Shown here in pieces: positions 18,574-58,388 of a stretch of DNA of 64,000 nt. The stretch lies in IMG/VR virus record IMGVR_UViG_3300042319_002138, positions 162,304 to 226,303 of that record; one strand, written 5' to 3'. The number at the start of each line of letters is the position of its first letter. The stretch's first letter is position 1. The translations under genes and the position numbers were made by a program. Under the pieces are notes generated by a model. That model saw nothing but the letters and a program-made list of their open reading frames with translations, did not search any database and was not told the DNA's origin.

Positions 18574-20016
18574 ATGTCAAGATTAACTGAAGCATTACAA
18601 ACTGAAAACACAACCACTAAGAACGGGATGGAAACTAATTCATCTTCTCTTAATGAGTGTGTTAACCTTTTCTTCTCCATTGGAGCAATGAGAGGTAAAA
18701 GTTCTGAGAGTGTTGTAAAACTTTTCTCAAAGGCTTTCAGTGAAGAACCAACTACAGCATTAAGAATCCTTTTTTGGGCAAGAGATGTTAGAGGTGGTGC
18801 TGGTGAGAGAAAAATCTTTAGAGATATTTTATCTTACCTAGTTGATAACTACTCAAAAGTAGTTAAAGTTAATCTTAACTTAATTCCTGAATACGGGAGA
18901 TGGGATGACGTTCATATCCTTTTCGGAACTGAATTGGAAAATGACGCCATCACACTTCTTGTAGAAGGTTTAAAAAGTGGTAATGGTTTATGTGCTAAAT
19001 GGATGCCCCGTAAAGGTTTGGTATTTAATAAAGTACGTAAAGCACTTAAGTTGGACCCAAAATCCCTTAGAAAATTACTTGTGTCTTTGTCAAACACGGT
19101 AGAACAAAAAATGTGTTCGAAAAGTTGGGCAGAGATTGAGTATTCAAAGACACCATCTTTGGCTATGTCAAGGTATACAAAAGCTTTTGGCAGAAACGAC
19201 CAAGAAAGATTTGGTCAATTTATTGAAGCCCTTCAAAAAGGTGAAACTAAAGTTAACGCCGGAGCTTTGTATCCTTACGATGTTACCAAGAATCTTAGAT
19301 TCGGTAATAAAGATTTGGCTAATGAACAATGGAAAGCCCTACCAAATTATATGGAAGGTTCAACAGAACTTGTCCTACCTTTGGTTGACGTTTCAGGTTC
19401 AATGGATTGTTCGGTAGGAGGTAATCCAAACCTTACATGTATGGAGGTGGCTATTTCTTTGGGTATGTACATCTCTGAAAGAAATGAGGGAGCATTTAAA
19501 GATATGTTTATGACATTTTCTTCAAATCCCGAAATTCAAAAATTGATGGGTCCACTTAGTGACCGTTACAATCAATTAGCTAGAGCTAAATGGGGTATGT
19601 CAACTAATTTAGAAGCAGCGTTCAAGACTATCTTGAATCAAGCAGTTAAATTTGGTGTTCCACAGGAAGAGATGCCAACAAAGATTCTTATCCTATCCGA
19701 TATGGAGTTTGATTCCGCTACTAGTAGTGGTTGGGGAAATGAATCTGATTGGAATCCCTCGGCTATGTCGATGATTGATGAAATGTACACTAACGCTGGT
19801 TATGTAAAACCTGGAATTATTTTCTGGAACCTACATTCCAACGGGGGTAATTTCCCAGCAAGATTTGATGAGGTTGGAACTGCTTTAATTAGTGGTTTCA
19901 GTCCATCAATCTTGAAATCGGTTCTGAATAATCCTAACAGTTTAACACCTGTTAATATTATGAATGAAACCGTACATTCAGAAAGATATGAACCTGTAAA
20001 GGTTTGGATTCTTTAA
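18574..20016 (+). CDS. DUF2828-type Ro60/TROVE-like protein with vWA domain
   Basis: 'FWARDVRGGAGER', 'PEYGRWDD', 'AKWMPR', MIDAS 'DVSGSM', 'ILSDMEFD', 'IIFWNL'. Confidence 0.8.
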   Translation: MSRLTEALQTENTTTKNGMETNSSSLNECVNLFFSIGAMRGKSSESVVKLFSKAFSEEPTTALRILFWARDVRGGAGERKIFRDILSYLVDNYSKVVKVNLNLIPEYGRWDDVHILFGTELENDAITLLVEGLKSGNGLCAKWMPRKGLVFNKVRKALKLDPKSLRKLLVSLSNTVEQKMCSKSWAEIEYSKTPSLAMSRYTKAFGRNDQERFGQFIEALQKGETKVNAGALYPYDVTKNLRFGNKDLANEQWKALPNYMEGSTELVLPLVDVSGSMDCSVGGNPNLTCMEVAISLGMYISERNEGAFKDMFMTFSSNPEIQKLMGPLSDRYNQLARAKWGMSTNLEAAFKTILNQAVKFGVPQEEMPTKILILSDMEFDSATSSGWGNESDWNPSAMSMIDEMYTNAGYVKPGIIFWNLHSNGGNFPARFDEVGTALISGFSPSILKSVLNNPNSLTPVNIMNETVHSERYEPVKVWIL

Positions 20017-28354: not shown

Positions 28355-30562
28355 TCATCGCATAATTGTTAAATGTCCTGTTATCATTTTACGTGAGTCA
28401 TCATACTCAGACCCATACATTATTCTCCAAACATAAATCCCATCAAAACACATTTTATTATTATAAGTACCATCCCAACCAACGGTATGATTGTATGATT
28501 CAAAAATTGTTTCACCCCATCTATTGAATACCAATAAATTATAATCATAGACATCAAACCCATCAGTAAATATTGGTAACCAAATATTGTTGAAAGCATC
28601 ACCATCGGGGGTAAATGTATTAGGTATATAAATTAATTCTTGTGGACATTCTTGTATTGCTATATTAGCTTGTTCTTCATTAGAAACACAACCATTAACC
28701 GTTTGGGAAACGCTAATTGTATAAAAACCAACATTATTCCAAACATAAGGTAAACTATTATCTTGTATTGTATCACCTTCAACAACCCAATCAAACAACC
28801 CAGATAAAGATGAATAAGCTGTATAGATTCTAAAAATACTATCACCTTCACAAAGTTGGTTAAATTCATATGAAGGTGTTACAGATGTTATGATTGGTTG
28901 TGGGTTTACAATAACGTTGATTGTTGTATCAAATGGGCAATTACTTTGTGTATATGTATAAGTTACATCATTGTTTGTTATGATACCTTGTTGTGGGCAA
29001 AATTCATCAGTCTGAACCCCATTGACTAAGAAAGTACCATTTAAAGGTGAACCCACTAAATCTACACAACCATCATAATCACAAAAAGGACCAATAGGGT
29101 CTATTGTAGGGTTTATGTTTAAAATAAATGTAGTGAAGTAAGAGGTATCACTATTACAACCAATAGGACTAGTAGAATAAACACTTATAGAGTCTTGATA
29201 TAAACCACTAGGTTCTAATGACCAATCCGTTGTTATATTATCAGTACCTTGACCATTTATTATTTGTGGTGTTGTAGACCATATGTAGTTGTAACCAACA
29301 CCCATAGAAGGTACACTATAACTTTCTGATGTTGATAAATAACATACCGTATCAGGACCACTAATAGGTGTCATTATTATTTGTGCTGGGTTAGTGAGTG
29401 TTGCATTACCTGTTACGGTACAACCTATACCGTCTGTAATTAAAAAACTATAATTACCATAACAAAGGTTAGTGGGGTTAAAAGTTGTTTGTAGAGTATT
29501 CCAAGAAATAGTAGTGACACCATTGGTTCCGTTAGGGATTACATTAATACTACCATCACAATAGTTATAACAAGTTGGGTCAATAAAAGTAATTGTAGGT
29601 TGTGGTAAGTTAGGTGGACCAGGTTGTACAAACACCGTATCAGGTCCTGGACCGGCAATACTATTACAAGTATTCCATCCAACATTACAAGAAGGATATA
29701 CTAGTTGACAAGTATAATTAGCTCCTTGTACAGGTGGTGTAACCGTAATGGACGCACCAACCCCAATTGGATTTGGGTTACCTACAATATACCATGTTGG
29801 TACAGGTAAAACAGTTGGTCCACTTGGAGTGTATCGGTACGCATCATTATTTGCTGTCCATTGTGTGGAATTCCTACCTGGTACAGTTATCGCCACGGTT
29901 CCTGTGGTATTATGTAATCCTTGAACCGCGGTACCTCCCGCCCAAGCTAGACAGTTTGGTTTTGATTGAATATAATTTTCTATTACGTTTGTTGATTCAT
30001 AAATCACTGTATGAAATGTCCCCAGTAAATTTGTACATGAAAACATAGGGACACCAACCCAACTAACAACTAATTTTCTACAAGGTGCTGTACCTTGAAC
30101 TTGGTACCTAATTTGCCCACCTAAACCTGGGTGCCAATCTTGCCAAGGACCCATGACACAATTTTTTGGTACTGTACCCGCACCATTAGGTATTGTTGCT
30201 GAAGTAAATGTTGTTGGTTGTGCCGGTGAAAAAGAAATCCAACCGTTAGAACCAACCCAAAATTGATTGTATGTTTGTCCAAAGAAACAAAATGTAAACC
30301 CAATATTAAAAGGACCTTGTTGTGAATCATCCGACATAAATAATTGTGTACCAGTATTTGTTTGTGTTACATAAGGAATATTTGTAACACCGTAGTTTGT
30401 TGTTTGATTTGGATTTGAACCTGGTCCACATTGACTAAAATCGGCAGTTAATGTTGTTGACCCAACACCACAAGGTAGTATTTGGTCTGGTCCTAAATAA
30501 GGACAGTATTGTGAATAGGTCACAAAAGAAATTAGTATAAAAAGGTATTTAATTAAGTTCAT
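28355..30562 (-). CDS. Secreted adhesin-like protein with T9SS type B (gliding motility-associated, CHU_C) C-terminal domain
   Basis: Signal peptide ending YSQ; C-terminal 'YIPNTFTPDGDAFN...VFNRWGE...GWDGTYN...GIYVW'. Confidence 0.88.
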   Translation of the reverse strand: MNLIKYLFILISFVTYSQYCPYLGPDQILPCGVGSTTLTADFSQCGPGSNPNQTTNYGVTNIPYVTQTNTGTQLFMSDDSQQGPFNIGFTFCFFGQTYNQFWVGSNGWISFSPAQPTTFTSATIPNGAGTVPKNCVMGPWQDWHPGLGGQIRYQVQGTAPCRKLVVSWVGVPMFSCTNLLGTFHTVIYESTNVIENYIQSKPNCLAWAGGTAVQGLHNTTGTVAITVPGRNSTQWTANNDAYRYTPSGPTVLPVPTWYIVGNPNPIGVGASITVTPPVQGANYTCQLVYPSCNVGWNTCNSIAGPGPDTVFVQPGPPNLPQPTITFIDPTCYNYCDGSINVIPNGTNGVTTISWNTLQTTFNPTNLCYGNYSFLITDGIGCTVTGNATLTNPAQIIMTPISGPDTVCYLSTSESYSVPSMGVGYNYIWSTTPQIINGQGTDNITTDWSLEPSGLYQDSISVYSTSPIGCNSDTSYFTTFILNINPTIDPIGPFCDYDGCVDLVGSPLNGTFLVNGVQTDEFCPQQGIITNNDVTYTYTQSNCPFDTTINVIVNPQPIITSVTPSYEFNQLCEGDSIFRIYTAYSSLSGLFDWVVEGDTIQDNSLPYVWNNVGFYTISVSQTVNGCVSNEEQANIAIQECPQELIYIPNTFTPDGDAFNNIWLPIFTDGFDVYDYNLLVFNRWGETIFESYNHTVGWDGTYNNKMCFDGIYVWRIMYGSEYDDSRKMITGHLTIMR

Positions 30563-31479: not shown

Positions 31480-33405
31480 ATGGATAAAAATTTTTACATT
31501 AATAAATTAAATAAAACTTTAATTTCACAAACACATAACCCTCTTTTTTATAAAGGGGATATAGTAGAAGGTTCTAAAATTCTAACTAAAGAAGTTGTAG
31601 ACTCAATTAATGTTGATAGATGTTCTATATGGTTATACAACAAAAATAAAACATCTATTGTTTGCCAACAATTATATGTTAAATCTGAAAATATGTGGTA
31701 TGATGGTTTAGAAATCTTTGAAAAGGATTTTGGACCGTATTTCGAAGAATTAATAAAGAACCCAATAATAATAGCTAATGATGCTGAAAAACATCCAGCA
31801 ACATCTTGTTTTACTGATGGTTATTTAAAACCACTGGGTATTAAATCTATGTTAGATGTACCTATCATTTATTTTGGGGAAACTATTGGTGTTATATGTA
31901 TTGAAAGTTTTACATTACGTGAATGGGATTCTTTTGAGGTTGATTTTACTCAATTATTATCTTCTTTATACACTTTTGCTTATTCAATAAAAGAAACAAA
32001 CAATTTAAATAAAAAAATAGAAGAAACAGAAAAATTTATTGACGTATCGACAATTATATCTACTGCTGATAAAAGAGGTAAAATTACATATGTTAATAAA
32101 AAATTTGAGGATGTTTCTGGGTGGTCTTTGGATGAGGTAGTTGGTAAAGACCATGTTATTGTTAATTCGGGATTACAACCTGATGGATATTGGGGTAAAA
32201 TGTATGAAACGGTAATGAAAGGTGATGTATGGAATGACGTTGTTACCAATAAAGGAAAATCAGGAGAATTATATTACGTTGATACTTTTATTAGAGCAAT
32301 TTTTGATACCGATGGTAAATTGGATGGATTTGCTTCAATAAGACAAGATGTTACAGAACTTAAAAAAAAGGAAGTTGAAATTCGCAATAGAATGAACGCG
32401 ATAAATAAATCTAACGCAGTTATTGAGTTTGATTTAGAAGGAAACATCATTTTTGCTAATAATTTGTTTTTAGAAACTATGGGATATTCTTTACAGGATG
32501 AAGTAGTTGGAAAACACCATAGAATTTTTATAGATGAGGAATACTCAAAAAGTGAAGAATACTCTCTTTTTTGGGAAAAATTAAATGAAGGGGTGTTATT
32601 TACCGGTGAAATTACTAGAATTAAAAAAGACGGTTCTTTAGTGTATCTACAAGCAACATACAATCCAGTTATCGGTTTAGATGGTAAGGTTTATCGTGTT
32701 ATGAAAATCGCGACAGATATCACCAATTCCTACGAACAAAAGAAAGAAATTGAAAAGAAAAACACTTACCTAGAACATGCGGCTAAAATATTAAGACACG
32801 ATATGCATTCAGGTATTAATACTTATATGCCAAGAGGATTAAGTTCTTTAGAAAGAAGATTAACCCCCGAAGATATTAAAACTTTAAAAATTGAGGCCCC
32901 AATTAAAATGATTAAAGAGGGTTTAAAACATTCCCAAAAAGTATATAAAGGGGTTTACGAATTTACAAATCTTGTAAAGAAAGATGTTGTTTTAAATAAA
33001 ACGGAATGTAATTTAAAAGATATACTTGAGGATTATTTATCAGCGACAGCATATAGTAGTCAAGTTATTATTGATGAGTTACCAACGATAGAAGTTAATG
33101 AACCATTATTCTGTACCGCAGTCGATAATTTAATTCGTAATGGGTTAAAGTATAATGATAGTAATACAAAATTTGTTAAAATATATATGGAAGATGGTAA
33201 TCTAATTATACAAGACAACGGTAGAGGGATTACACAAAAAGATTTTATTCATTTATCCCAACCATATACCAGAAAAGAAGGCCAAAAAGAATCTGGAACT
33301 GGTCTAGGGCTTAATATATGTGTAGCTATTTTAGAAGAACATAAATTTAATATTTCGTGTGAGAAAAATGACATAGGGACAAAAATGAAAATTGAACTAA
33401 AATGA
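31480..33405 (+). CDS. Cytoplasmic sensor histidine kinase (GAF-PAS-PAS-HisKA-HATPase)
   Basis: GAF 'MLDVPII..GVICIE'; two PAS/PAC; H box 'RHDMHSG'; N box 'DNLIRNGLKY'; 'DNGRG'; 'GTGLGL'. Confidence 0.93.
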   Translation: MDKNFYINKLNKTLISQTHNPLFYKGDIVEGSKILTKEVVDSINVDRCSIWLYNKNKTSIVCQQLYVKSENMWYDGLEIFEKDFGPYFEELIKNPIIIANDAEKHPATSCFTDGYLKPLGIKSMLDVPIIYFGETIGVICIESFTLREWDSFEVDFTQLLSSLYTFAYSIKETNNLNKKIEETEKFIDVSTIISTADKRGKITYVNKKFEDVSGWSLDEVVGKDHVIVNSGLQPDGYWGKMYETVMKGDVWNDVVTNKGKSGELYYVDTFIRAIFDTDGKLDGFASIRQDVTELKKKEVEIRNRMNAINKSNAVIEFDLEGNIIFANNLFLETMGYSLQDEVVGKHHRIFIDEEYSKSEEYSLFWEKLNEGVLFTGEITRIKKDGSLVYLQATYNPVIGLDGKVYRVMKIATDITNSYEQKKEIEKKNTYLEHAAKILRHDMHSGINTYMPRGLSSLERRLTPEDIKTLKIEAPIKMIKEGLKHSQKVYKGVYEFTNLVKKDVVLNKTECNLKDILEDYLSATAYSSQVIIDELPTIEVNEPLFCTAVDNLIRNGLKYNDSNTKFVKIYMEDGNLIIQDNGRGITQKDFIHLSQPYTRKEGQKESGTGLGLNICVAILEEHKFNISCEKNDIGTKMKIELK

Positions 33406-34016
33406 TAAAACTAAAAAATTTATTAACCATATTTTTCATAAGTATGGTAAGTATAGTGTATTCACAACCAACCTACCCTATCCAGACACAATTAAAAGGT
33501 GATTCTGTGGTTATTCTTACAAAAAAACAATCTGATGATATTAATTCACTAATTGAGAATCAAAAAATTAGAATACAAAAATATAAAACAGAAATAAAAT
33601 TAGTTAATGATACTAACACGTTATTAAATAACGATATTAAAATAAAAGATAGTGTTATTAACCAATTGGATAGTTTGTTAACCGTCCAAAACAATTATTA
33701 CGATAGTTTAATTTCTAAAATAGATACGTTAGAGAATTGGATTTTATCGTCGTCGATAGATAATGGGTACCTATATTATTCTTGGCAAGACTCAACAGTT
33801 AAAGTTATTGATTTAAGTTTGTATATGTTAGTATCGCATAGAGGAAGTGGTAATTATAGTTTAATTACAAGAGGTGATGTTACTAATATATATTATTGGA
33901 AACAAATAAATCTACTTAAAGAAGAAAGTCCTGAGATTGGTTGGGAATTAAATATATCCCCAAAATATAAACCAAGAATAGTATTATTCCCATATAAATT
34001 AACCCCAAAATTATGA
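33402..34016 (+). CDS. Secreted coiled-coil protein in two-component locus
   Basis: Signal peptide ending YSQ. Confidence 0.6.
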   Translation: MIKLKNLLTIFFISMVSIVYSQPTYPIQTQLKGDSVVILTKKQSDDINSLIENQKIRIQKYKTEIKLVNDTNTLLNNDIKIKDSVINQLDSLLTVQNNYYDSLISKIDTLENWILSSSIDNGYLYYSWQDSTVKVIDLSLYMLVSHRGSGNYSLITRGDVTNIYYWKQINLLKEESPEIGWELNISPKYKPRIVLFPYKLTPKL

Positions 34017-35416
34017 TAAAAAATATTTTAATAACAATAATGTTTTTGGGTTTTTTTACTTCTTTAAATGTAAATTCACAGACTGATAATAACCCCAAAA
34101 AAACAGAGATTGAACCTACATGTCCTAGTGATAGTCGTATAACTAGTTTAATTAAAAAATTAAATTACGAACCAAATAAAAAATTAACTAAATACCAATC
34201 AAGCTTATGTCAAGAAATTGGTATCTCTTTTTATAATAAAGGTATGTATGATGAGTCAGATTGGTATTTAGATAAGGTTAGTACCTATATTGATGTTGTT
34301 GATTTAAAACCTGAAAAAGTTTTTGACACACCTAAAGAAGAACCCGTACAAGAGTTAAGTGACTCAGAATTATCTAGTATTAAAGCCGACCAAAAATTTT
34401 TAGATGACCTACCAAAATCATACGATAATTTATCTAAAAAAGATATAAAAAAAATTGCTGATGAGATAGAGTCAAAACTCCAAAAACTATTAAAAGAAAA
34501 AAAAGAATTATTAAAAAATAAAGCTAGTCAAGAAGTTATCAGTTCTAAAACAAGTACTATACAAATATTAGGTAAAGAAAAAAATATCATTAATCTTAGT
34601 GTTAAAAATGATGATTTAGTTACCGATAAAAAAACCTTAAAAAAATATTTATGGTGGTCCACAATTGTTCTTTCTGTTTTGGTTTTAGGTATTATTGTTT
34701 TATTACAAAGAAAAACAATTAAAGTCCAAGACATAGAAATCGAAAACCAATTAAAAGACATTAACAAGAAAAACACTTACCTTGAATATGCGGCTAGAAT
34801 AATTAGACACGACATGCATTCAGGTATTAACACCTATATACCAAGAGGGTTATCGTCATTAGAAAAAAGAATTTCAATTGAGGAAATGAATAACTTAAAA
34901 ATTACACCCTCAATTAAAATGATAAAAGATGGTTTGGCACACACACAAAAAGTATATAAAAGTGTTTATGAGTTTACAAACCTTGTGAAAAATACTGTAG
35001 TTTTAGATAGAAATATGGTTGATATAAAAGAATCTTTATTAAAATACTTAACAAATACATCATATAAAAATCAGGTAGAAATTAGTGAATTAGTTACACT
35101 AAATGTAAATGAAACTCTTTTTTGGAACGCTATTGATAATTTAATTAAAAATGGGTTAAAATATAATAGTAGTGAAAATAAAGAAATTAAAATTTACATG
35201 GATAATAATGATTTAATTATTGAAGATAATGGTGTTGGATTTTCACAAAAAGAGTTCGAAAGAACAACAGGTGAATATTTAAATAAAAAGAGTAATTCCG
35301 AAGTTGGTTTAGGTTTAGGTATAACCAAAACAATTTTAGAAGAACATGGTTTTAGTATGATGTGTGAAAAAATTAACACTGGTACAAAAATAACGGTTAA
35401 ATTAAATAAAAATTAA
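34013..35416 (+). CDS. Membrane sensor histidine kinase
   Basis: Signal peptide, periplasmic domain, one TM, H box 'RHDMHSG', 'DNLIKNGLKY', 'DNGVG', 'GLGLG'. Confidence 0.9.
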   Translation: MIKNILITIMFLGFFTSLNVNSQTDNNPKKTEIEPTCPSDSRITSLIKKLNYEPNKKLTKYQSSLCQEIGISFYNKGMYDESDWYLDKVSTYIDVVDLKPEKVFDTPKEEPVQELSDSELSSIKADQKFLDDLPKSYDNLSKKDIKKIADEIESKLQKLLKEKKELLKNKASQEVISSKTSTIQILGKEKNIINLSVKNDDLVTDKKTLKKYLWWSTIVLSVLVLGIIVLLQRKTIKVQDIEIENQLKDINKKNTYLEYAARIIRHDMHSGINTYIPRGLSSLEKRISIEEMNNLKITPSIKMIKDGLAHTQKVYKSVYEFTNLVKNTVVLDRNMVDIKESLLKYLTNTSYKNQVEISELVTLNVNETLFWNAIDNLIKNGLKYNSSENKEIKIYMDNNDLIIEDNGVGFSQKEFERTTGEYLNKKSNSEVGLGLGITKTILEEHGFSMMCEKINTGTKITVKLNKN

Positions 35417-37308: not shown

Positions 37309-37378
37309 ACCGAGGCTTAGTGGTAAAGAACTATCTCTCATAAGGATGGTCAAGTGGGTTCAATTCCCATACTCGGTA
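37309..37378 (+). tRNA. tRNA with CAU anticodon (Met or Ile2), short D arm
   Basis: Loop CTCATAA; T arm GTGGG-TTCAATT-CCCAT. Confidence 0.7.
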
Positions 37379-37386
37379 CATTATAT

Positions 37387-37457
37387 TGCGGCAAGGTGTA
37401 ATTGGTTGCATGGGAGTCTCATAAACTTCAGGGGTGGTTCGAGTCCACAGCACGCTA
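37387..37457 (+). tRNA. tRNA with CAU anticodon, imperfect acceptor stem
   Basis: GGAGT-CTCATAA-ACTTC; bulged acceptor. Confidence 0.6.
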
Positions 37458-37812: not shown

Positions 37813-37895
37813 ACGTCAGTGGCGGAATTGGTAGACGCGTTGGTTTTAGGAACCAATATCGTTAAGATGTGGGGGTTCGACTCCCCCCTGACGTA
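37813..37895 (+). tRNA. tRNA-Leu(UAG)
   Basis: Loop TTTAGGA, long variable arm. Confidence 0.93.
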
Positions 37896-37938
37896 CTTTT
37901 ATTTTGCCAATTAAACAATAACCCTTATATTTGTAATT

Positions 37939-41258: not shown

Positions 41259-41450
41259 ATGGAATATTTTAAATTGTTTTTAATGTGGTTAGCATTTATT
41301 GTTATCACAACTTATTACGGGGATTACCTTGTAAGTAGAGAAGTAAACGGGTTCATCCAACTTTTAGGTTTCGTTGGAATGGTTGCACTCGTAGGATTAG
41401 TAGGAAACGAAACCATCAAAGTTTTAAATAATAAAAAAGAAGAAAAATGA
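41259..41450 (+). CDS. Small two-TM protein
   Basis: Hydrophobic helices; TATATTTG promoter. Confidence 0.6.
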   Translation: MEYFKLFLMWLAFIVITTYYGDYLVSREVNGFIQLLGFVGMVALVGLVGNETIKVLNNKKEEK

Positions 41451-42397
41451 TTAGTACAGTAATTTTTGTAGTATGTTTAATTGCGGTTATCCTTACCGTT
41501 CTAAAAACAAGAGGTAGTATGTTTACGGTAACCCAAAACCATTACGGTCATGATAGTAAACGATTCAACCCATCTTGGCTCATTAAACCGATTGGTATTT
41601 TTGTTGTAGGTATCGTTATTTCAATGACCCAACCGTTTGCGATTGAAAAAGTTGACGCAGGTCACAAAGGATTAAAGATTAATTTGGTCGGAGACCAACG
41701 AGGTGTATCAAGTTATCAGTATAAAACTGGTTGGGTACTTTATAACACTTGGACAGAACAAGTATTGGAGTTTCCAACATACCAACAACACATTGAGTAT
41801 GAAGACCAAGGTGTAATCCTTAAAGGTGGATTCTCAGCAACCATTAAACCAACATTTAACTATTCTCTACGTGAGGATGCTATTGGTGATATGTTTGTTA
41901 ATTTAAGATTATCTATTAGTGAAATTGAAAAGGGTTGGTTGAAAAACGCTATTATTGGGGCAGTAAATGACGTAGCTAACACATGGGAGGTAGATAGTAT
42001 TTTTAATCACCGACAAGCATTTGAATCAGCAATTGTTGCAGAATGTAATGTTAGGTTATCTAAATGGTTTAACGTATCTCAGTTGAGAACTAATATCACA
42101 CCACCTGAGGCATTACAAGAGTCAATTATCGCTAAAACAAAGGCTATCCAACAAGCTGAAGCCTCTGAACAACAAGCTATCGCAGCAATCTCTGAAGGAA
42201 GACGTAAAGTAGCCGTAGCAAGAGCGGATTCTGCTGAAACTATAATCAACGCAAATGCGTCAGCACTTTCAATTAAGATTAAACAAACTCAATTAACACC
42301 TATGTATATTGAGTACTTAAAGGCGTCTGCTTGGGATGGAAAATTACCAACAACGGTAGCAGGTGGTTCAGGATTGTTTTTAAACCTAAACAAATAA
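41447..42397 (+). CDS. SPFH/band-7 (prohibitin-like) membrane protein
   Basis: TM anchor, 'VDAGHKG', 'NITPPEALQESIIAK', 'WDGKLP'. Confidence 0.88.
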   Translation: MISTVIFVVCLIAVILTVLKTRGSMFTVTQNHYGHDSKRFNPSWLIKPIGIFVVGIVISMTQPFAIEKVDAGHKGLKINLVGDQRGVSSYQYKTGWVLYNTWTEQVLEFPTYQQHIEYEDQGVILKGGFSATIKPTFNYSLREDAIGDMFVNLRLSISEIEKGWLKNAIIGAVNDVANTWEVDSIFNHRQAFESAIVAECNVRLSKWFNVSQLRTNITPPEALQESIIAKTKAIQQAEASEQQAIAAISEGRRKVAVARADSAETIINANASALSIKIKQTQLTPMYIEYLKASAWDGKLPTTVAGGSGLFLNLNK

Positions 42398-43917: not shown

Positions 43918-44000
43918 GCTCGGGTGGTGAAATAGGTATACACGTTTGACTTAAAATCAAATTCCCATTGGGAGTGAGGGTTCAAGTCCCTCTCCGAGTA
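43918..44000 (+). tRNA. tRNA-Leu(UAA)
   Basis: TTTGA-CTTAAAA-TCAAA, long variable arm. Confidence 0.92.
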
Positions 44001-44061
44001 CTGTGAAATGAACAACGTCACCACAAGAGTTGTACCTTTATGGTTTTATAATGTGGTATTT

Positions 44062-44356: not shown

Positions 44357-44962
44357 ATGAATTTTGAGGAAAAATATAATAAAGAAGAACTTGAGAAGTT
44401 AATTTTTGTTGAGAGTAAGAGTTATCGTGAAATTGGTAAAATTTATGGTGTTAGTGACGCATACATAAAAAAAGTGTGTGGCAGATTAGGGATTAAACTT
44501 AGAAAAAGAAAAAATTTTCCTGAAAATTTTATACCACACAATAAAGGTATGGGTAAAAAAGTTATATGTAAAAATTGTGGTAAAGAAACAAAAAGTTCAC
44601 ACGATAAACAAATATATTGTTCATTTGATTGTAATGTGGAACATAAAAATAAAAATAAATACAAAGATTACTTAGACAATCAAGAAAAATATTGTAATAC
44701 CACATCAGGTTTGCGATGGTTAAAAAAATATTTTTTAATAGACCAAGATAATAAGTGTAATATTTGTGGAATAGATAATTTTTGGAACGGTAAACCATTA
44801 GTTTTTGTTATGGACCATATAAACGGTGATGCTAGTAATAACAAAAGAGATAATCTAAGATTAATATGTCATAATTGTGATTCACAGTTAGACACATACA
44901 AATCTAAAAATAAGAATTCAGCAAGGAAAGAAAGATATTTGTTAAACTACAAAAATATTTAA
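44357..44962 (+). CDS. HNH homing endonuclease inside tRNA cluster 3
   Basis: 'KCNICG...VMDHINGDASNNKRDNLRLICHNCD'; N-terminal CxxC module. Confidence 0.9.
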   Translation: MNFEEKYNKEELEKLIFVESKSYREIGKIYGVSDAYIKKVCGRLGIKLRKRKNFPENFIPHNKGMGKKVICKNCGKETKSSHDKQIYCSFDCNVEHKNKNKYKDYLDNQEKYCNTTSGLRWLKKYFLIDQDNKCNICGIDNFWNGKPLVFVMDHINGDASNNKRDNLRLICHNCDSQLDTYKSKNKNSARKERYLLNYKNI

Positions 44963-45177
44963 AATAAACGAGAAAGAGATACTCGTAGGGTTTTTAAGTA
45001 TCCCTCAAAACTTAACGGAGCTGGTACCACCACGTCAAGGGGTACTCGTTGGGAATCGGAAGGAAGACTCTCCTATCCCCCAAGTAAGAGTTGACTTTTA
45101 AGTGGTAAGACACGTTGGGTTTTGAAATAGAAAAACTGTGAATATCTACTCACCATTAATCTCAGGTGGGGAAACAT

Positions 45178-45283
45178 AGTCAGGTGGCGGAATTGGTTAG
45201 ACGCTAAATTAACGAGTGGATAGTGTGCCATTGGGGAAGGGCCAAGAAAGTTACACATACAGGTTCAAGTCCTGTCCTGACTA
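45178..45283 (+). ncRNA. tRNA-like RNA (Leu-type D arm, T arm, acceptor AGTCAGG/CCTGACT) lacking a canonical anticodon arm
   Basis: TGGCGGAATTGGTTAGACGC ... ACAGGTTCAAGTCCTGT; the middle does not form a 5-bp stem with 7-nt loop. Confidence 0.7.
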
Positions 45284-45300
45284 CAAAAAAATAAAAAATT

Positions 45301-45549
45301 ATGGAAAATAAAGAAACATACCAAATGGTGAATTATGATGGTGATAGTTACGACAGTAAGATCCCTGTGGAATTAGTTGAGTCGTTCCTTAAAATGAAAG
45401 AACTAATGGAACAGGTGTCTAATGGGAAATATTATTGTACACCAAGTATGTATTATACAGATGAATTGGAAGGTGTTTCAGTAGGTATAGTTGAGGTTAA
45501 TGGTGACGGGACACATATTAAAACACCATTTAGTTTAATTATCAAATAA
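45301..45549 (+). CDS. Hypothetical protein
   Basis: ORF between the two tRNA-like RNAs. Confidence 0.55.
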   Translation: MENKETYQMVNYDGDSYDSKIPVELVESFLKMKELMEQVSNGKYYCTPSMYYTDELEGVSVGIVEVNGDGTHIKTPFSLIIK

Positions 45550-45554
45550 AAAAT

Positions 45555-45635
45555 AGTCAGGTGGCGAAATGGTGACGCCTAAATGAGACCCGTGGGGCGA
45601 AAAGACTCTCGTAGGTTCAAATCCTGTCCTGACTA
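45555..45635 (+). ncRNA. Second tRNA-like RNA with identical acceptor AGTCAGG/CCTGACT and no anticodon arm
   Basis: TGGCGAAATGGTGACGC ... GTAGGTTCAAATCCTGT. Confidence 0.7.
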
Positions 45636-45714: not shown

Positions 45715-45797
45715 CAATCCCTTTGTATTGACAAGGGGATTTTTATTTTGATATTTAAAAATAATTCCTTATCTTTGTAGAAATAAAATAAGGGACT

Positions 45798-49742: not shown

Positions 49743-49804
49743 TTAAAAAAAAAATTGACAGATTAAAAAAAAGTTATTATCTTTGTTAAACAAATAAAAA
49801 ACAT

Positions 49805-49913
49805 ACACAAGTGGTGAAATTGGTAAACACGGGGTGTAACAACTCTGACCGAAAATAATCTACCTTCGGGTCGATAAAAGTAGGTTTTGGAGGTTCGAAT
49901 CCTTCTTTGTGTA
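49805..49913 (+). ncRNA. tRNA-like RNA with aberrant anticodon arm and expanded variable region
   Basis: Acceptor ACACAAG/TTTGTGT, D arm TGGTGAAATTGGTAAACAC, T arm GGAGGTTCGAATCCTTC. Confidence 0.65.
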
Positions 49914-50002: not shown

Positions 50003-50292
50003 ATATAAGTGGCGGAATTGGTAGACGCTTACGTTTGAAAAGAGAGTAAGGTTAGATTGGGAGTTCTGTAAAAGCCTAAAAGACCTTAGATTTAGCTAAT
50101 CTTGGTGGTCTATAATCAGACTGGTCAAGAGGTTTGGTTACGGTACTCTTTAAAAACCAACTGTAACAAGTTATATAGATAGATTTAATAATATGATAGA
50201 ATTAAATCCTTAGACTCTTGTAAAATGTATGGACTGAAAGAAACCTAGTTTTGAATAAGTTCGTGGAGGTTCGAATCCTCCCTTATATACCA
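50003..50292 (+). ncRNA. 290-nt RNA with tRNA ends (acceptor, D arm, T arm, CCA) and an insert of about 235 nt
   Basis: ATATAAG-TGGCGGAATTGGTAGACGC ... GGAGGTTCGAATCCTCC-CTTATAT-ACCA. Confidence 0.75.
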
Positions 50293-57995: not shown

Positions 57996-58388
57996 GGGGG
58001 TGTTTTTGGATTTGACTGGTTAACGATTGGTAATGGGTAAGCATGTCGTGAAATAATACTATCACGTTAATACACGTATTGAAACTTCAAACGGCGACGT
58101 ATTCGCAAACGCAACTGTAGGTCACTTTGTGACTGAAGGTGCAACAGTAGCTGCCTAATCATATTAGGTGTTACTACGGGGTCGGCAGACATATAACCTA
58201 GCAACAGAAGTCGTAGTTGTGGTGGATTATCATTGAACCCAAAATCGAATGATACCCATTGTTTGTTGATTTACAATGGTAAATAATAAATCAAATATTT
58301 TGTCCATTTAGATTAAAATGGAATAAGCATGTAGAAGACGTTAGTAATGTAACGCAGGACGAGGGTTCGAAACCCTCCACCTCCACCA
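57996..58388 (+). ncRNA. ssrA: tmRNA
   Basis: GGGGGTG/CACCTCC-ACCA acceptor with G3-U70, T arm GAGGGTTCGAAACCCTC, tag ORF 58093-58158 GDVFANATVGHFVTEGATVAA*. Confidence 0.92.

What the first reader, a model, noticed from the sequence alone, without database searches (positions are those of the whole stretch)
45178..45635. Twin anticodon-less tRNA mimics with identical acceptor stems
Two RNAs share AGTCAGG/CCTGACT-A, Leu-type D arms and near-identical T arms, but their middles differ (about 55 versus 30 nt) and neither forms an anticodon arm. They flank an 82-aa ORF. LeuRS largely ignores the anticodon (established), so they may be chargeable decoys for tRNA-targeting defences or elbow-binding proteins (inference).
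Basis: partly seen in the sequence, partly recalled or inferred. Interest (0 to 1): 0.65.

Follow-up and report, generated by a model that had tools for sequence, protein, structure and literature searches.

The report
Phage tRNA-like RNAs with swappable cargo
The two "anticodon-less tRNAs" are real genes of a large, apparently undescribed family of phage RNAs that keep the top half of a leucine tRNA but carry hundreds of different, exchangeable inserts where the anticodon arm should be; what the inserts do is still unknown.

Summary
E1 (45178-45283) and E2 (45555-45635) have a perfect acceptor stem AGUCAGG/CCUGACU plus A73, a Leu-type D arm and a T arm, but no anticodon arm. They flank an 82-aa ORF. 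They are not private pseudogenes. It occurs in only 4 of about 185,000 prokaryote species genomes, three of them Bacteroidota MAGs. The middle ("cargo", 17 to over 140 nt) falls into about 200 unrelated types. Stems of the top half covary. Each cargo type is conserved (median 89%) while its flanks are unalignable. Closely related phages carry unrelated cargos at the same locus, so cargos are swapped as cassettes. Some phages hold arrays of 7-10 members. Five near-complete 60-110 kb phage genomes carry 1-3 members and no other tRNA. A73 and U48 are 90% conserved. The D and T arms match a host tRNA-Leu(CAA). My reading: these are non-decoding, tRNA-processed, possibly leucylatable scaffold RNAs that display an exchangeable effector domain. 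The decoy idea is neither shown nor excluded. The function of the cargo is unknown.

The parts
45178..45283 (+). E1, a tRNA-like RNA of 106 nt. Acceptor 5' strand 45178-45184, D arm 45187-45204, cargo 45205-45258 (single-stranded linker plus a hairpin that ends next to the T stem), T arm 45259-45275, acceptor 3' strand 45276-45282, discriminator A at 45283.
   Evidence: The E1-type cargo is conserved at 87-98% in 7 other viral contigs whose flanks do not align. One compensatory change (U-A to C-G) lies in the cargo helix.
45301..45549 (+). 82-aa ORF between E1 and E2, function unknown.
   Evidence: ORF listed. No significant Pfam or PHROG family and no Atlas lead. The only copies found are 100% identical, in near-identical contigs.
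45555..45635 (+). E2, a tRNA-like RNA of 81 nt. Acceptor 5' strand 45555-45561, D arm 45564-45578, cargo 45579-45610, T arm 45611-45627, acceptor 3' strand 45628-45634, discriminator A at 45635.
   Evidence: E2 fits the family pattern used. Its cargo type was seen only in this phage lineage.
45641..45715 (+). Canonical tRNA-Met (CAU), 5 nt downstream of E2.
   Evidence: 71.5 bits.
45716..45751 (+). Intrinsic-terminator-like hairpin with a T tract. It closes the unit E1 - ORF - E2 - tRNA-Met.
44357..44962 (+). HNH homing-endonuclease-like ORF of 201 aa, directly upstream of E1.
   Evidence: This is not a general neighbour of the family: HNH was found in 2 of 150 neighbouring ORFs.
49805..49913 (+). 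E3, a third RNA of the same build. Acceptor ACACAAG/TTTGTGT, Leu-type D arm, middle of about 57 nt, T arm. A Bacteroidota-type -7 promoter motif (TAnnTTTG) lies at 49778-49785.
   Evidence: 48.4 bits. This acceptor type was found only in this phage lineage.
50003..50292 (+). E4, a fourth RNA of the same build. Acceptor ATATAAG/CTTATAT, A73 and an encoded CCA, Leu-type D arm, structured middle of about 235 nt, T arm.
   Evidence: fold z = -2.05. No group I intron match. Model R1 matches the two halves separately.

Best explanation
E1 and E2, and also E3 and E4, are working genes of a large phage-specific family of non-decoding RNAs derived from tRNA-Leu. The family occurs in phages of Bacteroidota.

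Shown: the family keeps the acceptor/T-arm minihelix and usually the Leu-type D arm, with a tRNA-like core (A73, U48, G18G19, T loop). The anticodon arm is replaced by a cargo domain of about 17 to more than 140 nt. The cargo belongs to one of hundreds of unrelated types, each of them conserved. Cargos are exchanged as cassettes between related phages, with breakpoints exactly at the conserved arms.

Inferred mechanism: the RNA is transcribed with its neighbours or from its own host-type promoter. The host tRNA machinery (RNase P, RNase Z, CCA-adding enzyme) cuts it out, and it folds into a stable L-shape. It cannot read codons. Many members may be leucylated, because the LeuRS identity set is kept. 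The top half serves as a generic handle for processing and stability, and at the DNA level as a recombination handle. The cargo is the specific effector and binds a host or phage partner that is still unknown. No phage protein partner is conserved, so the machinery that reads the top half must be the host's.
For: Family size and specificity:
- Only 4 hits in the genome collection, 3 of them in Bacteroidota MAGs.

Selection at the RNA level on the top half:
- 15 pairs are 98.7% paired, 10 pairs show changes on both sides, and 0 of 500 shuffles reach this.
- Variant acceptor stems covary.

Core and identity:
- A73 is 90% and U48 is 90% conserved, although the pattern did not fix them.
- The D arm is identical and the T arm nearly identical to a host MAG tRNA-Leu(CAA). 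The 3' trailer (C after A73) is the same as in host tRNAs and in 715 other ARAGORN tRNA calls from the same contigs.
- LeuRS needs neither the anticodon nor the variable arm (PMC9976931).

Cargo is functional and modular:
- About 200 cargo types.
- Within a type the median identity is 0.89, while the 300-nt flanks are at random level in 90 of 94 pairs.
- 12 compensatory pairs lie in cargo helices, and unpaired cargo columns are as conserved as paired ones.
- Among 83 syntenic pairs with about 90% identical flanks, cargo identity is bimodal: 46 pairs at 0.9 or more, 37 pairs at 0.4-0.5. The breakpoints sit at the arm borders.
- Arrays of 7-10 members with different cargos exist.

Not a by-product of tRNA arrays:
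- Five near-complete genomes of 60-110 kb carry 1-3 members and no other tRNA.

Expression signals:
- 91% of neighbouring ORFs are co-oriented.
- The Bacteroidota -7 motif peaks 0-9 nt upstream of the 5' end in 21 of 279 cases.
- A terminator follows the E1-E2-tRNA-Met unit.

No conserved phage partner.
Against:
- No target or partner of any cargo was identified.
- No motif is shared across cargos and no Rfam family matches them.
- Cargos show no antisense match to the phage's own genome and no homolog in 401 sampled Bacteroidota genomes.
- The shortest members carry only a 4-bp hairpin, which fits a function that lies in the top half.
- Conservation of a cargo type next to unrelated flanks could partly reflect recent horizontal transfer rather than purifying selection.
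- All family loci were collected with patterns that fix parts of the arms, so the invariance of the arms is overstated.
- E2's own cargo type has no diverged homolog.
Confidence: 0.6

Rival explanations
1. Top-half decoy or sponge. The function lies only in the tRNA-Leu-like acceptor, T and D core. It would titrate or distract LeuRS, an acceptor-end-modifying toxin or another elbow-binding factor. The middle would be structural filler that only needs to avoid being an anticodon arm.
For: - The LeuRS identity set is conserved (PMC9976931).
- Minimal members of 70-73 nt carry only a short hairpin whose stem covaries.
- There is no universal cargo motif.
- The acceptor/T minihelix is the most invariant part.
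Against: - Cargo sequences, including their unpaired parts, are as conserved as the scaffold.
- Discrete cargo types recur in unrelated phages.
- Cargos are swapped at syntenic loci in an all-or-none way.
- Single genomes keep up to 10 different cargos.
- Some members lack the D arm that LeuRS needs.
Confidence: 0.15
2. DNA-level element. The conserved 25-nt arms would be recombination, homing or attachment sequences, for example targets of the homing endonucleases common in phage tRNA clusters. The RNA itself would have no function.
For: - Cassette replacement occurs with breakpoints at the arms.
- The same element sits in unrelated flanks.
- An HNH gene lies next to E1.
- T4 has segB inside its tRNA cluster.
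Against: - Compensatory changes keep the acceptor, T and cargo helices paired.
- U48 and A73 are conserved.
- Some members have their own promoter placed at the 5' end.
- HNH occurs in only 2 of 150 neighbouring ORFs and no integrase was among the 25 commonest of 46 neighbour families.
- Orientation always follows that of the neighbouring genes.
Confidence: 0.07
3. Decaying tRNA-Leu pseudogenes that are tolerated or kept only as RNase P/Z cutting signals (punctuation) for polycistronic transcripts, such as the one that carries the 82-aa ORF.
For: - In this window E1 and E2 bracket an ORF with 18-nt and 5-nt spacers and sit in a tRNA cluster.
- ARAGORN assigns family members random or impossible anticodons.
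Against: - The family has hundreds of members with nearly invariant Leu-type arms across unrelated phages.
- Cargo is conserved and covaries.
- In phages without any tRNA it is the sole tRNA-like gene.
- Some members have their own promoter.
- Punctuation would work with any tRNA type and would allow drift.
Confidence: 0.05
4. Interrupted tRNA-Leu genes whose middle is an intron (group I or another kind) and which yield a decoding tRNA after splicing.
For: - Bacterial tRNA-Leu genes can carry group I introns (established knowledge).
- E4 has an insert of about 235 nt with a significantly stable fold.
Against: - No anticodon-stem halves are conserved on either side of the insert. The first and last cargo nucleotides vary, apart from U48.
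- Inserts as short as 17 nt leave no room for an anticodon arm.
- No group I or other Rfam match.
Confidence: 0.03

Closest known systems
Canonical class II tRNA-Leu (host Bacteroidota tRNA-Leu(CAA); the phage's own tRNA-Leu at 37813-37896 and 43918-44001)
   Same: Same 7-bp acceptor plus 5-bp T stem, and A73. The D arm is identical and the T arm nearly identical to a host MAG tRNA-Leu(CAA). The 3' trailer is the same. U48, G18G19 and the T loop are kept.
   Different: There is no anticodon arm, so no decoding is possible. The acceptor sequence AGUCAGG differs from the host Leu acceptor GCCCAGA. The region between the D and T arms is hypervariable.
Engineered 'tRNA scaffold' for recombinant RNA (Ponchon and Dardel; described in PMC3753655)
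   Same: The architecture is the same: the acceptor stem, T arm and D arm are kept, and the anticodon stem-loop is replaced by an arbitrary structured insert. In E. coli this gives correct processing and protection from nucleases.
   Different: That scaffold is man-made. Here the design is natural, specific to phages, based on tRNA-Leu and apparently exchanged between genomes. Processing and stability are inferred here, not shown.
Phage T4 stable RNAs species 1 and 2 (rnaC, rnaD) in the tRNA cluster
   Same: They are small stable phage RNAs of unknown function, encoded inside a tRNA gene cluster next to a homing endonuclease gene. The 3' 92 nt of rnaC match the family's top-half model at 27.8 bits, with an acceptor-like stem and a T arm.
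   Different: There is no sequence homology of the arms. There is no Leu-type D arm, rnaC has a 5' extension, and no family of swappable inserts is known for them.
tmRNA tRNA-like domain
   Same: It has an acceptor stem plus T arm without an anticodon arm, a large insert between the halves, is aminoacylated and does not decode by an anticodon.
   Different: tmRNA has alanine identity (G3-U70), a degenerate D arm, pseudoknots, a tag ORF and needs SmpB. None of these is present here. The phage's real tmRNA lies at 57996-58388.
Bacterial and phage Y RNAs of the YrlA type (partners of Ro60)
   Same: They are non-coding RNAs with a tRNA-like module that tRNA enzymes modify and cut, and they occur in phages too (PMC4201824).
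   Different: Their topology is permuted: the RNA ends lie in the Ro-binding stem, not in the acceptor stem. The Rfam YrlA score is 21 bits against a gathering score of 69. The Ro-like DUF2828 protein is present in this phage but in only 3 of 50 family-bearing viral records.
Minimalist tRNA-Leu of Larkin et al. 2002 (PMC115294, as summarised in PMC9976931)
   Same: It lacks the anticodon and variable arms and keeps the D arm, T arm and A73, and E. coli LeuRS still charges it.
   Different: It is a laboratory construct tested with E. coli LeuRS. Charging of the phage RNAs by Bacteroidota LeuRS has not been tested.

Membership tests
Canonical tRNA (Rfam RF00005) | Acceptor stem, D arm and T arm with conserved loop nucleotides | tested here: met
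   34.5 and 34.8 bits against a gathering score of 29, with the three arms aligned.
Canonical tRNA (Rfam RF00005) | Anticodon arm: 5-bp stem and 7-nt loop with an anticodon | tested here: not met
   The model replaces it with local insertions of 47 and 24 nt. ARAGORN makes no call. Across the family ARAGORN gives random, unnatural or '???' anticodons.
tRNA-Leu identity (substrate of bacterial LeuRS) | A73, A14, A15:U48, G18G19 in a Leu-type D loop, and D-loop/T-loop tertiary pairs | tested here: met
   A73 in 255 of 284 and U48 in 255 of 284 sequences. GG is correctly placed in 265 of 284. The D arm is identical to host tRNA-Leu(CAA). E1 meets all of these. E2 has C48 and a shorter D loop.
tRNA-Leu identity (substrate of bacterial LeuRS) | Actual aminoacylation with leucine | not testable with these tools
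   This needs an in vitro LeuRS assay or acid-gel or periodate analysis of RNA from infected cells.
tmRNA | G3-U70 alanine identity, tag-peptide reading frame, pseudoknots | tested here: not met
   Pair 3-70 is U-A. There is no tmRNA match at E1 or E2, whereas the true tmRNA at 57996-58388 scores 99 bits.
YrlA / Y RNA | Match to the Rfam YrlA model and linkage to a Ro60-type protein | tested here: not met
   21.2 bits against a gathering score of 69, and the match spans E2 and the neighbouring tRNA-Met. DUF2828 is present in 3 of 50 family-bearing records.
tRNA gene interrupted by a group I intron | Intron core (P3-P9), and exon halves that rebuild an anticodon arm | tested here: not met
   No Intron_gpI match up to E = 5 around E3 and E4, or in 19 family loci. 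No anticodon-stem halves are conserved.
tRNA pseudogene | Decay without compensatory change, and no conservation beyond the lineage | tested here: not met
   The top half covaries, with 0 of 500 shuffles reaching the observed values. Cargo helices hold 12 compensatory pairs. The family has at least 274 loci in unrelated phages.
T4-type stable RNAs of phage tRNA clusters (rnaC, rnaD) | Small non-decoding RNA encoded within a phage tRNA cluster, with a tRNA-like acceptor and T domain | tested here: inconclusive
   The location matches for E1-E4. The family model hits T4 rnaC at 27.8 bits, but the arms share no sequence, and many family members lie outside any tRNA cluster.

The most novel reading that the evidence does not exclude
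Phages of Bacteroidota run a natural 'tRNA-scaffold display' system. A common tRNA-Leu-like handle gives host-driven processing, stability and perhaps charging. It also acts as the recombination handle through which a shared pool of hundreds of small structured RNA effectors is shuffled between phages. The effectors would be weapons in the phage-host arms race, expressed from their own host-type promoters. Examples would be RNA decoys or sponges for defence proteins, or mimics of antitoxin or guide RNAs. This would make the loci the RNA counterpart of anti-defence gene islands.
Probability: 0.3. Interest if true: 0.9.

Novelty: new variant of a known kind. Interest (0 to 1): 0.8.

Why it matters
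If this is right, a common class of phage genes has been hidden in plain sight. Gene finders either miss these genes or label them as tRNAs with random anticodons, which distorts phage tRNA censuses and inferences about codon usage. Biologically it would be the first natural example of the tRNA-scaffold principle that RNA engineers invented independently. It would also be a modular system of RNA effectors exchanged by cassette swapping, with hundreds of uncharacterised structured RNA domains to explore. It offers a direct test of whether non-decoding, possibly leucylated tRNA mimics play a part in infection. It may also throw light on the T4 species 1 and 2 RNAs, whose function has been unexplained for 50 years.

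Tried and rejected
**Searches that found nothing**
- Cultured-phage records hold no member. Megablast and blastn with E1/E2 and with a consensus-like member gave only partial matches to the T arms of other tRNAs.
- The 82-aa ORF gave no family, no relatives beyond identical copies, and no Atlas lead.
- Acceptor types like those of E3 and E4 occur only in this phage lineage.
- Five literature searches, one of them for DUF2828 alone, found no description of such a family. [quoted passage not shown] Fremin et al. 2023 (PMC10690425) list unnamed tRNA-like candidates from IMG/VR that might overlap, but no supplement is held, so this could not be checked.

**Ideas tested and dropped**
- A Ro60-like partner: the window encodes a DUF2828/phrog_850 'RNA-binding protein', but it co-occurs with the family in only 3 of 50 records.
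- A conserved neighbouring protein: none. The largest cluster covers 8 of about 120 loci. Terminase genes lie next to a minority, and HNH was found in 2 of 150 neighbours.
- A conserved distal protein in 9 genomes: only terminase and portal are shared. A protein with a gamma-glutamyl cyclotransferase domain lies next to the element in G012 and has homologs in 3 other genomes.
- Cargo acting as antisense to the phage's own genome: matches are at chance level only.
- Cargo as a known RNA family: only tRNA hits.
- Cargo copied from the host: two elements compared with 401 Bacteroidota genomes match only through their arms.
- A universal cargo motif, including Shine-Dalgarno-like motifs: none found.
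- A group I intron in E4: no match.

Full report
**1. Setting.** The window is the last 64 kb of a 226-kb record of an uncultured virus (30.8% G+C, about 70% complete), that is, a jumbo phage. It carries 24 canonical tRNA genes and a tmRNA. Several clues point to a Bacteroidota host. The window encodes a protein with a CHU_C type IX secretion domain. The promoter motif TAnnTTTG occurs in front of genes here. The only prokaryote assemblies that hold the element are mostly Bacteroidota MAGs.

**2.
- E1 (45178-45283, 106 nt) and E2 (45555-45635, 81 nt) have the same 7-bp acceptor stem followed by A.
- Both have a 3-bp D stem with the D loop typical of tRNA-Leu, and a 5-bp T stem with a standard T loop.
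- Between the D and T arms lie 54 and 32 nt that form no anticodon arm.
- Rfam's tRNA model passes its threshold only by treating the anticodon arm as an insertion. ARAGORN is silent.
- The 82-aa ORF between them is open but has no recognisable relatives.
- tRNA-Met follows E2 after 5 nt, and then a terminator-like hairpin.
- Two further RNAs of the same design, E3 and E4, lie 4 kb downstream in front of the second tRNA-Met. E4 has an insert of about 235 nt and an encoded CCA.

**3. They belong to a very large family.**
- Together with a scan that fixed only the D and T arms, this gives at least 274 loci and 284 distinct sequences. Lengths are spread evenly from 70 to 127 nt within the gaps allowed. 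Members of 130-169 nt appear in arrays.
- The same pattern hit only 4 contigs among about 185,000 species genomes. Three are Bacteroidota MAGs, and in at least two of them the contig carries an array of the elements.
- No cultured phage record holds one.
- ARAGORN of 123 members, with random or unnatural anticodons or '???'. In databases they must therefore appear as odd tRNAs.

**4. The top half is under RNA-level selection and looks like tRNA-Leu.**
- In an alignment of 50 members chosen to include variant acceptors, 98.7% of cells in the 15 top-half pairs are standard pairs. Ten pairs show changes on both sides. No shuffle out of 500 and no slid register comes near this.
- When the search fixes only the D and T arms, about 80% of hits still have the acceptor AGUCAGG. 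The others have fully compensated stems.
- Two positions that no pattern fixed are each 90% conserved. One is the discriminator A73. The other is the U just before the T stem (position 48), which sits at the end of an otherwise hypervariable segment.
- With A14, A15, G18G19 and the T loop, this is the set that E. coli LeuRS uses. That enzyme still charges tRNA-Leu lacking both the anticodon and variable arms (PMC9976931, citing Larkin 2002).
- tRNA-Leu(CAA) of two of the MAGs has the same D arm and nearly the same T arm, and the same trailer (C after A73). The other ARAGORN tRNA calls in these phage contigs share that trailer.
- The acceptor differs from that of the host tRNA-Leu. Its top four pairs and the T arm equal those of a host tRNA-Arg.
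- A few members have lost the D arm, so the acceptor/T minihelix is the true constant.

**5. The middle is cargo, not debris.**
- The 284 middles fall into about 200 unrelated clusters, 150 of them singletons.
- They share no motif and match no Rfam family.
- Within clusters the cargo is conserved (median identity 0.89), while the 300 nt on either side are at the identity of random sequence in 90 of 94 pairs.
- E1's own cargo type occurs in 7 other contigs at 87-98% identity with unalignable flanks. It shows a compensated U-A to C-G change in its main helix.
- Over 16 clusters there are 12 compensatory pairs and very few broken ones. Unpaired cargo columns are as conserved as paired ones.
- The commonest layout is a single-stranded linker after the D arm, followed by a hairpin that ends 2-3 nt before the T stem.

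**6. Cargos are swapped as cassettes.**
- Among 83 pairs of loci whose flanks on both sides match at about 90%, cargo identity is bimodal. It is 0.9 or more in 46 pairs and 0.4-0.5 (unrelated) in 37 pairs.
- In one set of related phages the upstream gene end, a TAnnTTTG promoter motif 5 nt before the RNA, both arms and the downstream sequence are conserved. Yet the cargo is one of at least three unrelated types of 86-119 nt.
- The same types turn up elsewhere in other contexts, for example inside an array.
- Arrays of 7-10 members with different cargos, mixed with real tRNAs, occur in contigs of 62-75 kb.

**7. They stand alone.**
- Five near-complete phage genomes of 60-110 kb have 1-3 members and no other tRNA gene. 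Two more have a single other tRNA.
- No protein is a constant neighbour. No non-structural protein is shared by nine genomes that carry the family.
- The Ro-like DUF2828 protein of this phage is absent from 47 of 50 records.
- Whatever reads the top half must therefore come from the host.

**8. Interpretation.**
- Shown: this is a phage-specific family of non-decoding RNAs derived from tRNA-Leu, with selection on both the scaffold and the cargo, and with modular exchange of cargo.
- Inferred from established knowledge: RNase P, RNase Z and the CCA-adding enzyme recognise the acceptor/T minihelix and the elbow. These RNAs should therefore be cut out and stabilised like tRNAs. This is exactly how the engineered tRNA scaffold works in E. 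coli (PMC3753655). Many members may be leucylated.
- Inference only: the cargo is the effector and acts on a host or phage partner.
- The pure decoy reading is less likely but not excluded. The pseudogene/punctuation, DNA-only and intron readings are each contradicted by several results (see the rival explanations).

**9. Limits.**
- There are no expression data.
Counts are therefore lower bounds, and the uniformity of the arms is overstated.
- Cargo structures are thermodynamic and alignment predictions.
- Host assignment rests on indirect clues.

Noticed in passing
window 49805-49913 and 50003-50292: Two further anticodon-less, Leu-type tRNA-like RNAs (E3, E4) with other acceptor stems lie just upstream of the second tRNA-Met. 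E4 has a structured insert of about 235 nt and an encoded CCA. Both acceptor types are private to this phage lineage.
   Followed up: partly
window 57996-58388: A full-length tmRNA gene (99 bits, tag peptide ANATVGHFVTEGATVAA) is encoded by the phage.
   Followed up: no
window 18574-20016: A 480-aa protein with DUF2828 and DUF7788 (phrog_850, 'RNA-binding protein'), which I take from memory to be Ro60-related (not tested). About 50% identical homologs occur in 711 cultured phage records, mostly large phages (KVP40, Cronobacter S13, mycobacteriophages, Listeria and Staphylococcus phages). It is not linked to the tRNA-like family: 3 of 50 records.
   Followed up: partly
window 37309-37378 and 37395-37448: A third CAU-anticodon tRNA (30.3 bits) that ARAGORN does not call, followed by a partial tRNA-like stretch (23.5 bits) whose acceptor does not pair. 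No tRNA-His was found among the tRNAs called in the window.
   Followed up: no
window 44963-45177: A 215-nt non-coding stretch between the HNH gene and E1 looks relatively G+C-rich. It contains a repeated TACTCGT(A/T)GGG motif and short inverted repeats. It has no Rfam match and could be another structured RNA or a remnant of a mobile element.
   Followed up: no
window 31480-33405 and 34013-35416: The phage encodes a sensor histidine kinase-like protein with GAF, PAS and HATPase domains, and a second HATPase protein. This is unusual for a phage.
   Followed up: no
window 28355-30562 (- strand) and 41447-42397: A 735-aa protein with a PKD domain and a CHU_C type IX secretion sorting domain, which is a clue to a Bacteroidota host. 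Also an SPFH/Band 7 protein.
   Followed up: no
L020:1-3800 (- strand) and L075:2600-3900 (- strand): Dense arrays of 7-10 family members with different cargos (85-169 nt), interleaved with ordinary tRNAs, in viral contigs of 62 and 75 kb. Some members have no D arm.
   Followed up: partly
L318:910-1001 (- strand; phage T4 rnaC): The 3' 92 nt of T4 'species 1' RNA match the family's top-half model (27.8 bits). They have a 7-bp acceptor-like stem, a T arm, a discriminator A and the trailer CAA.
   Followed up: partly
L338:16156-17250 (- strand; genome G012) and homologs in G014, G024 and G047: A protein of about 365 aa with a gamma-glutamyl cyclotransferase-like domain. In G012 it lies directly downstream of the element. 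Homologs occur in three other complete phage genomes, where their position relative to the element was not checked.
   Followed up: no
L374:1454-1528 (host tRNA-Arg): tRNA-Arg(CCG) of one sampled Bacteroidota genome has the same T arm as the family and the same top four acceptor pairs. tRNA-Arg(CCU) genes in three other genomes match the same 25 nt at 92% (their sequences were not read). The family's minihelix may therefore be chimeric in origin: a Leu D arm with an Arg-like minihelix.
   Followed up: partly
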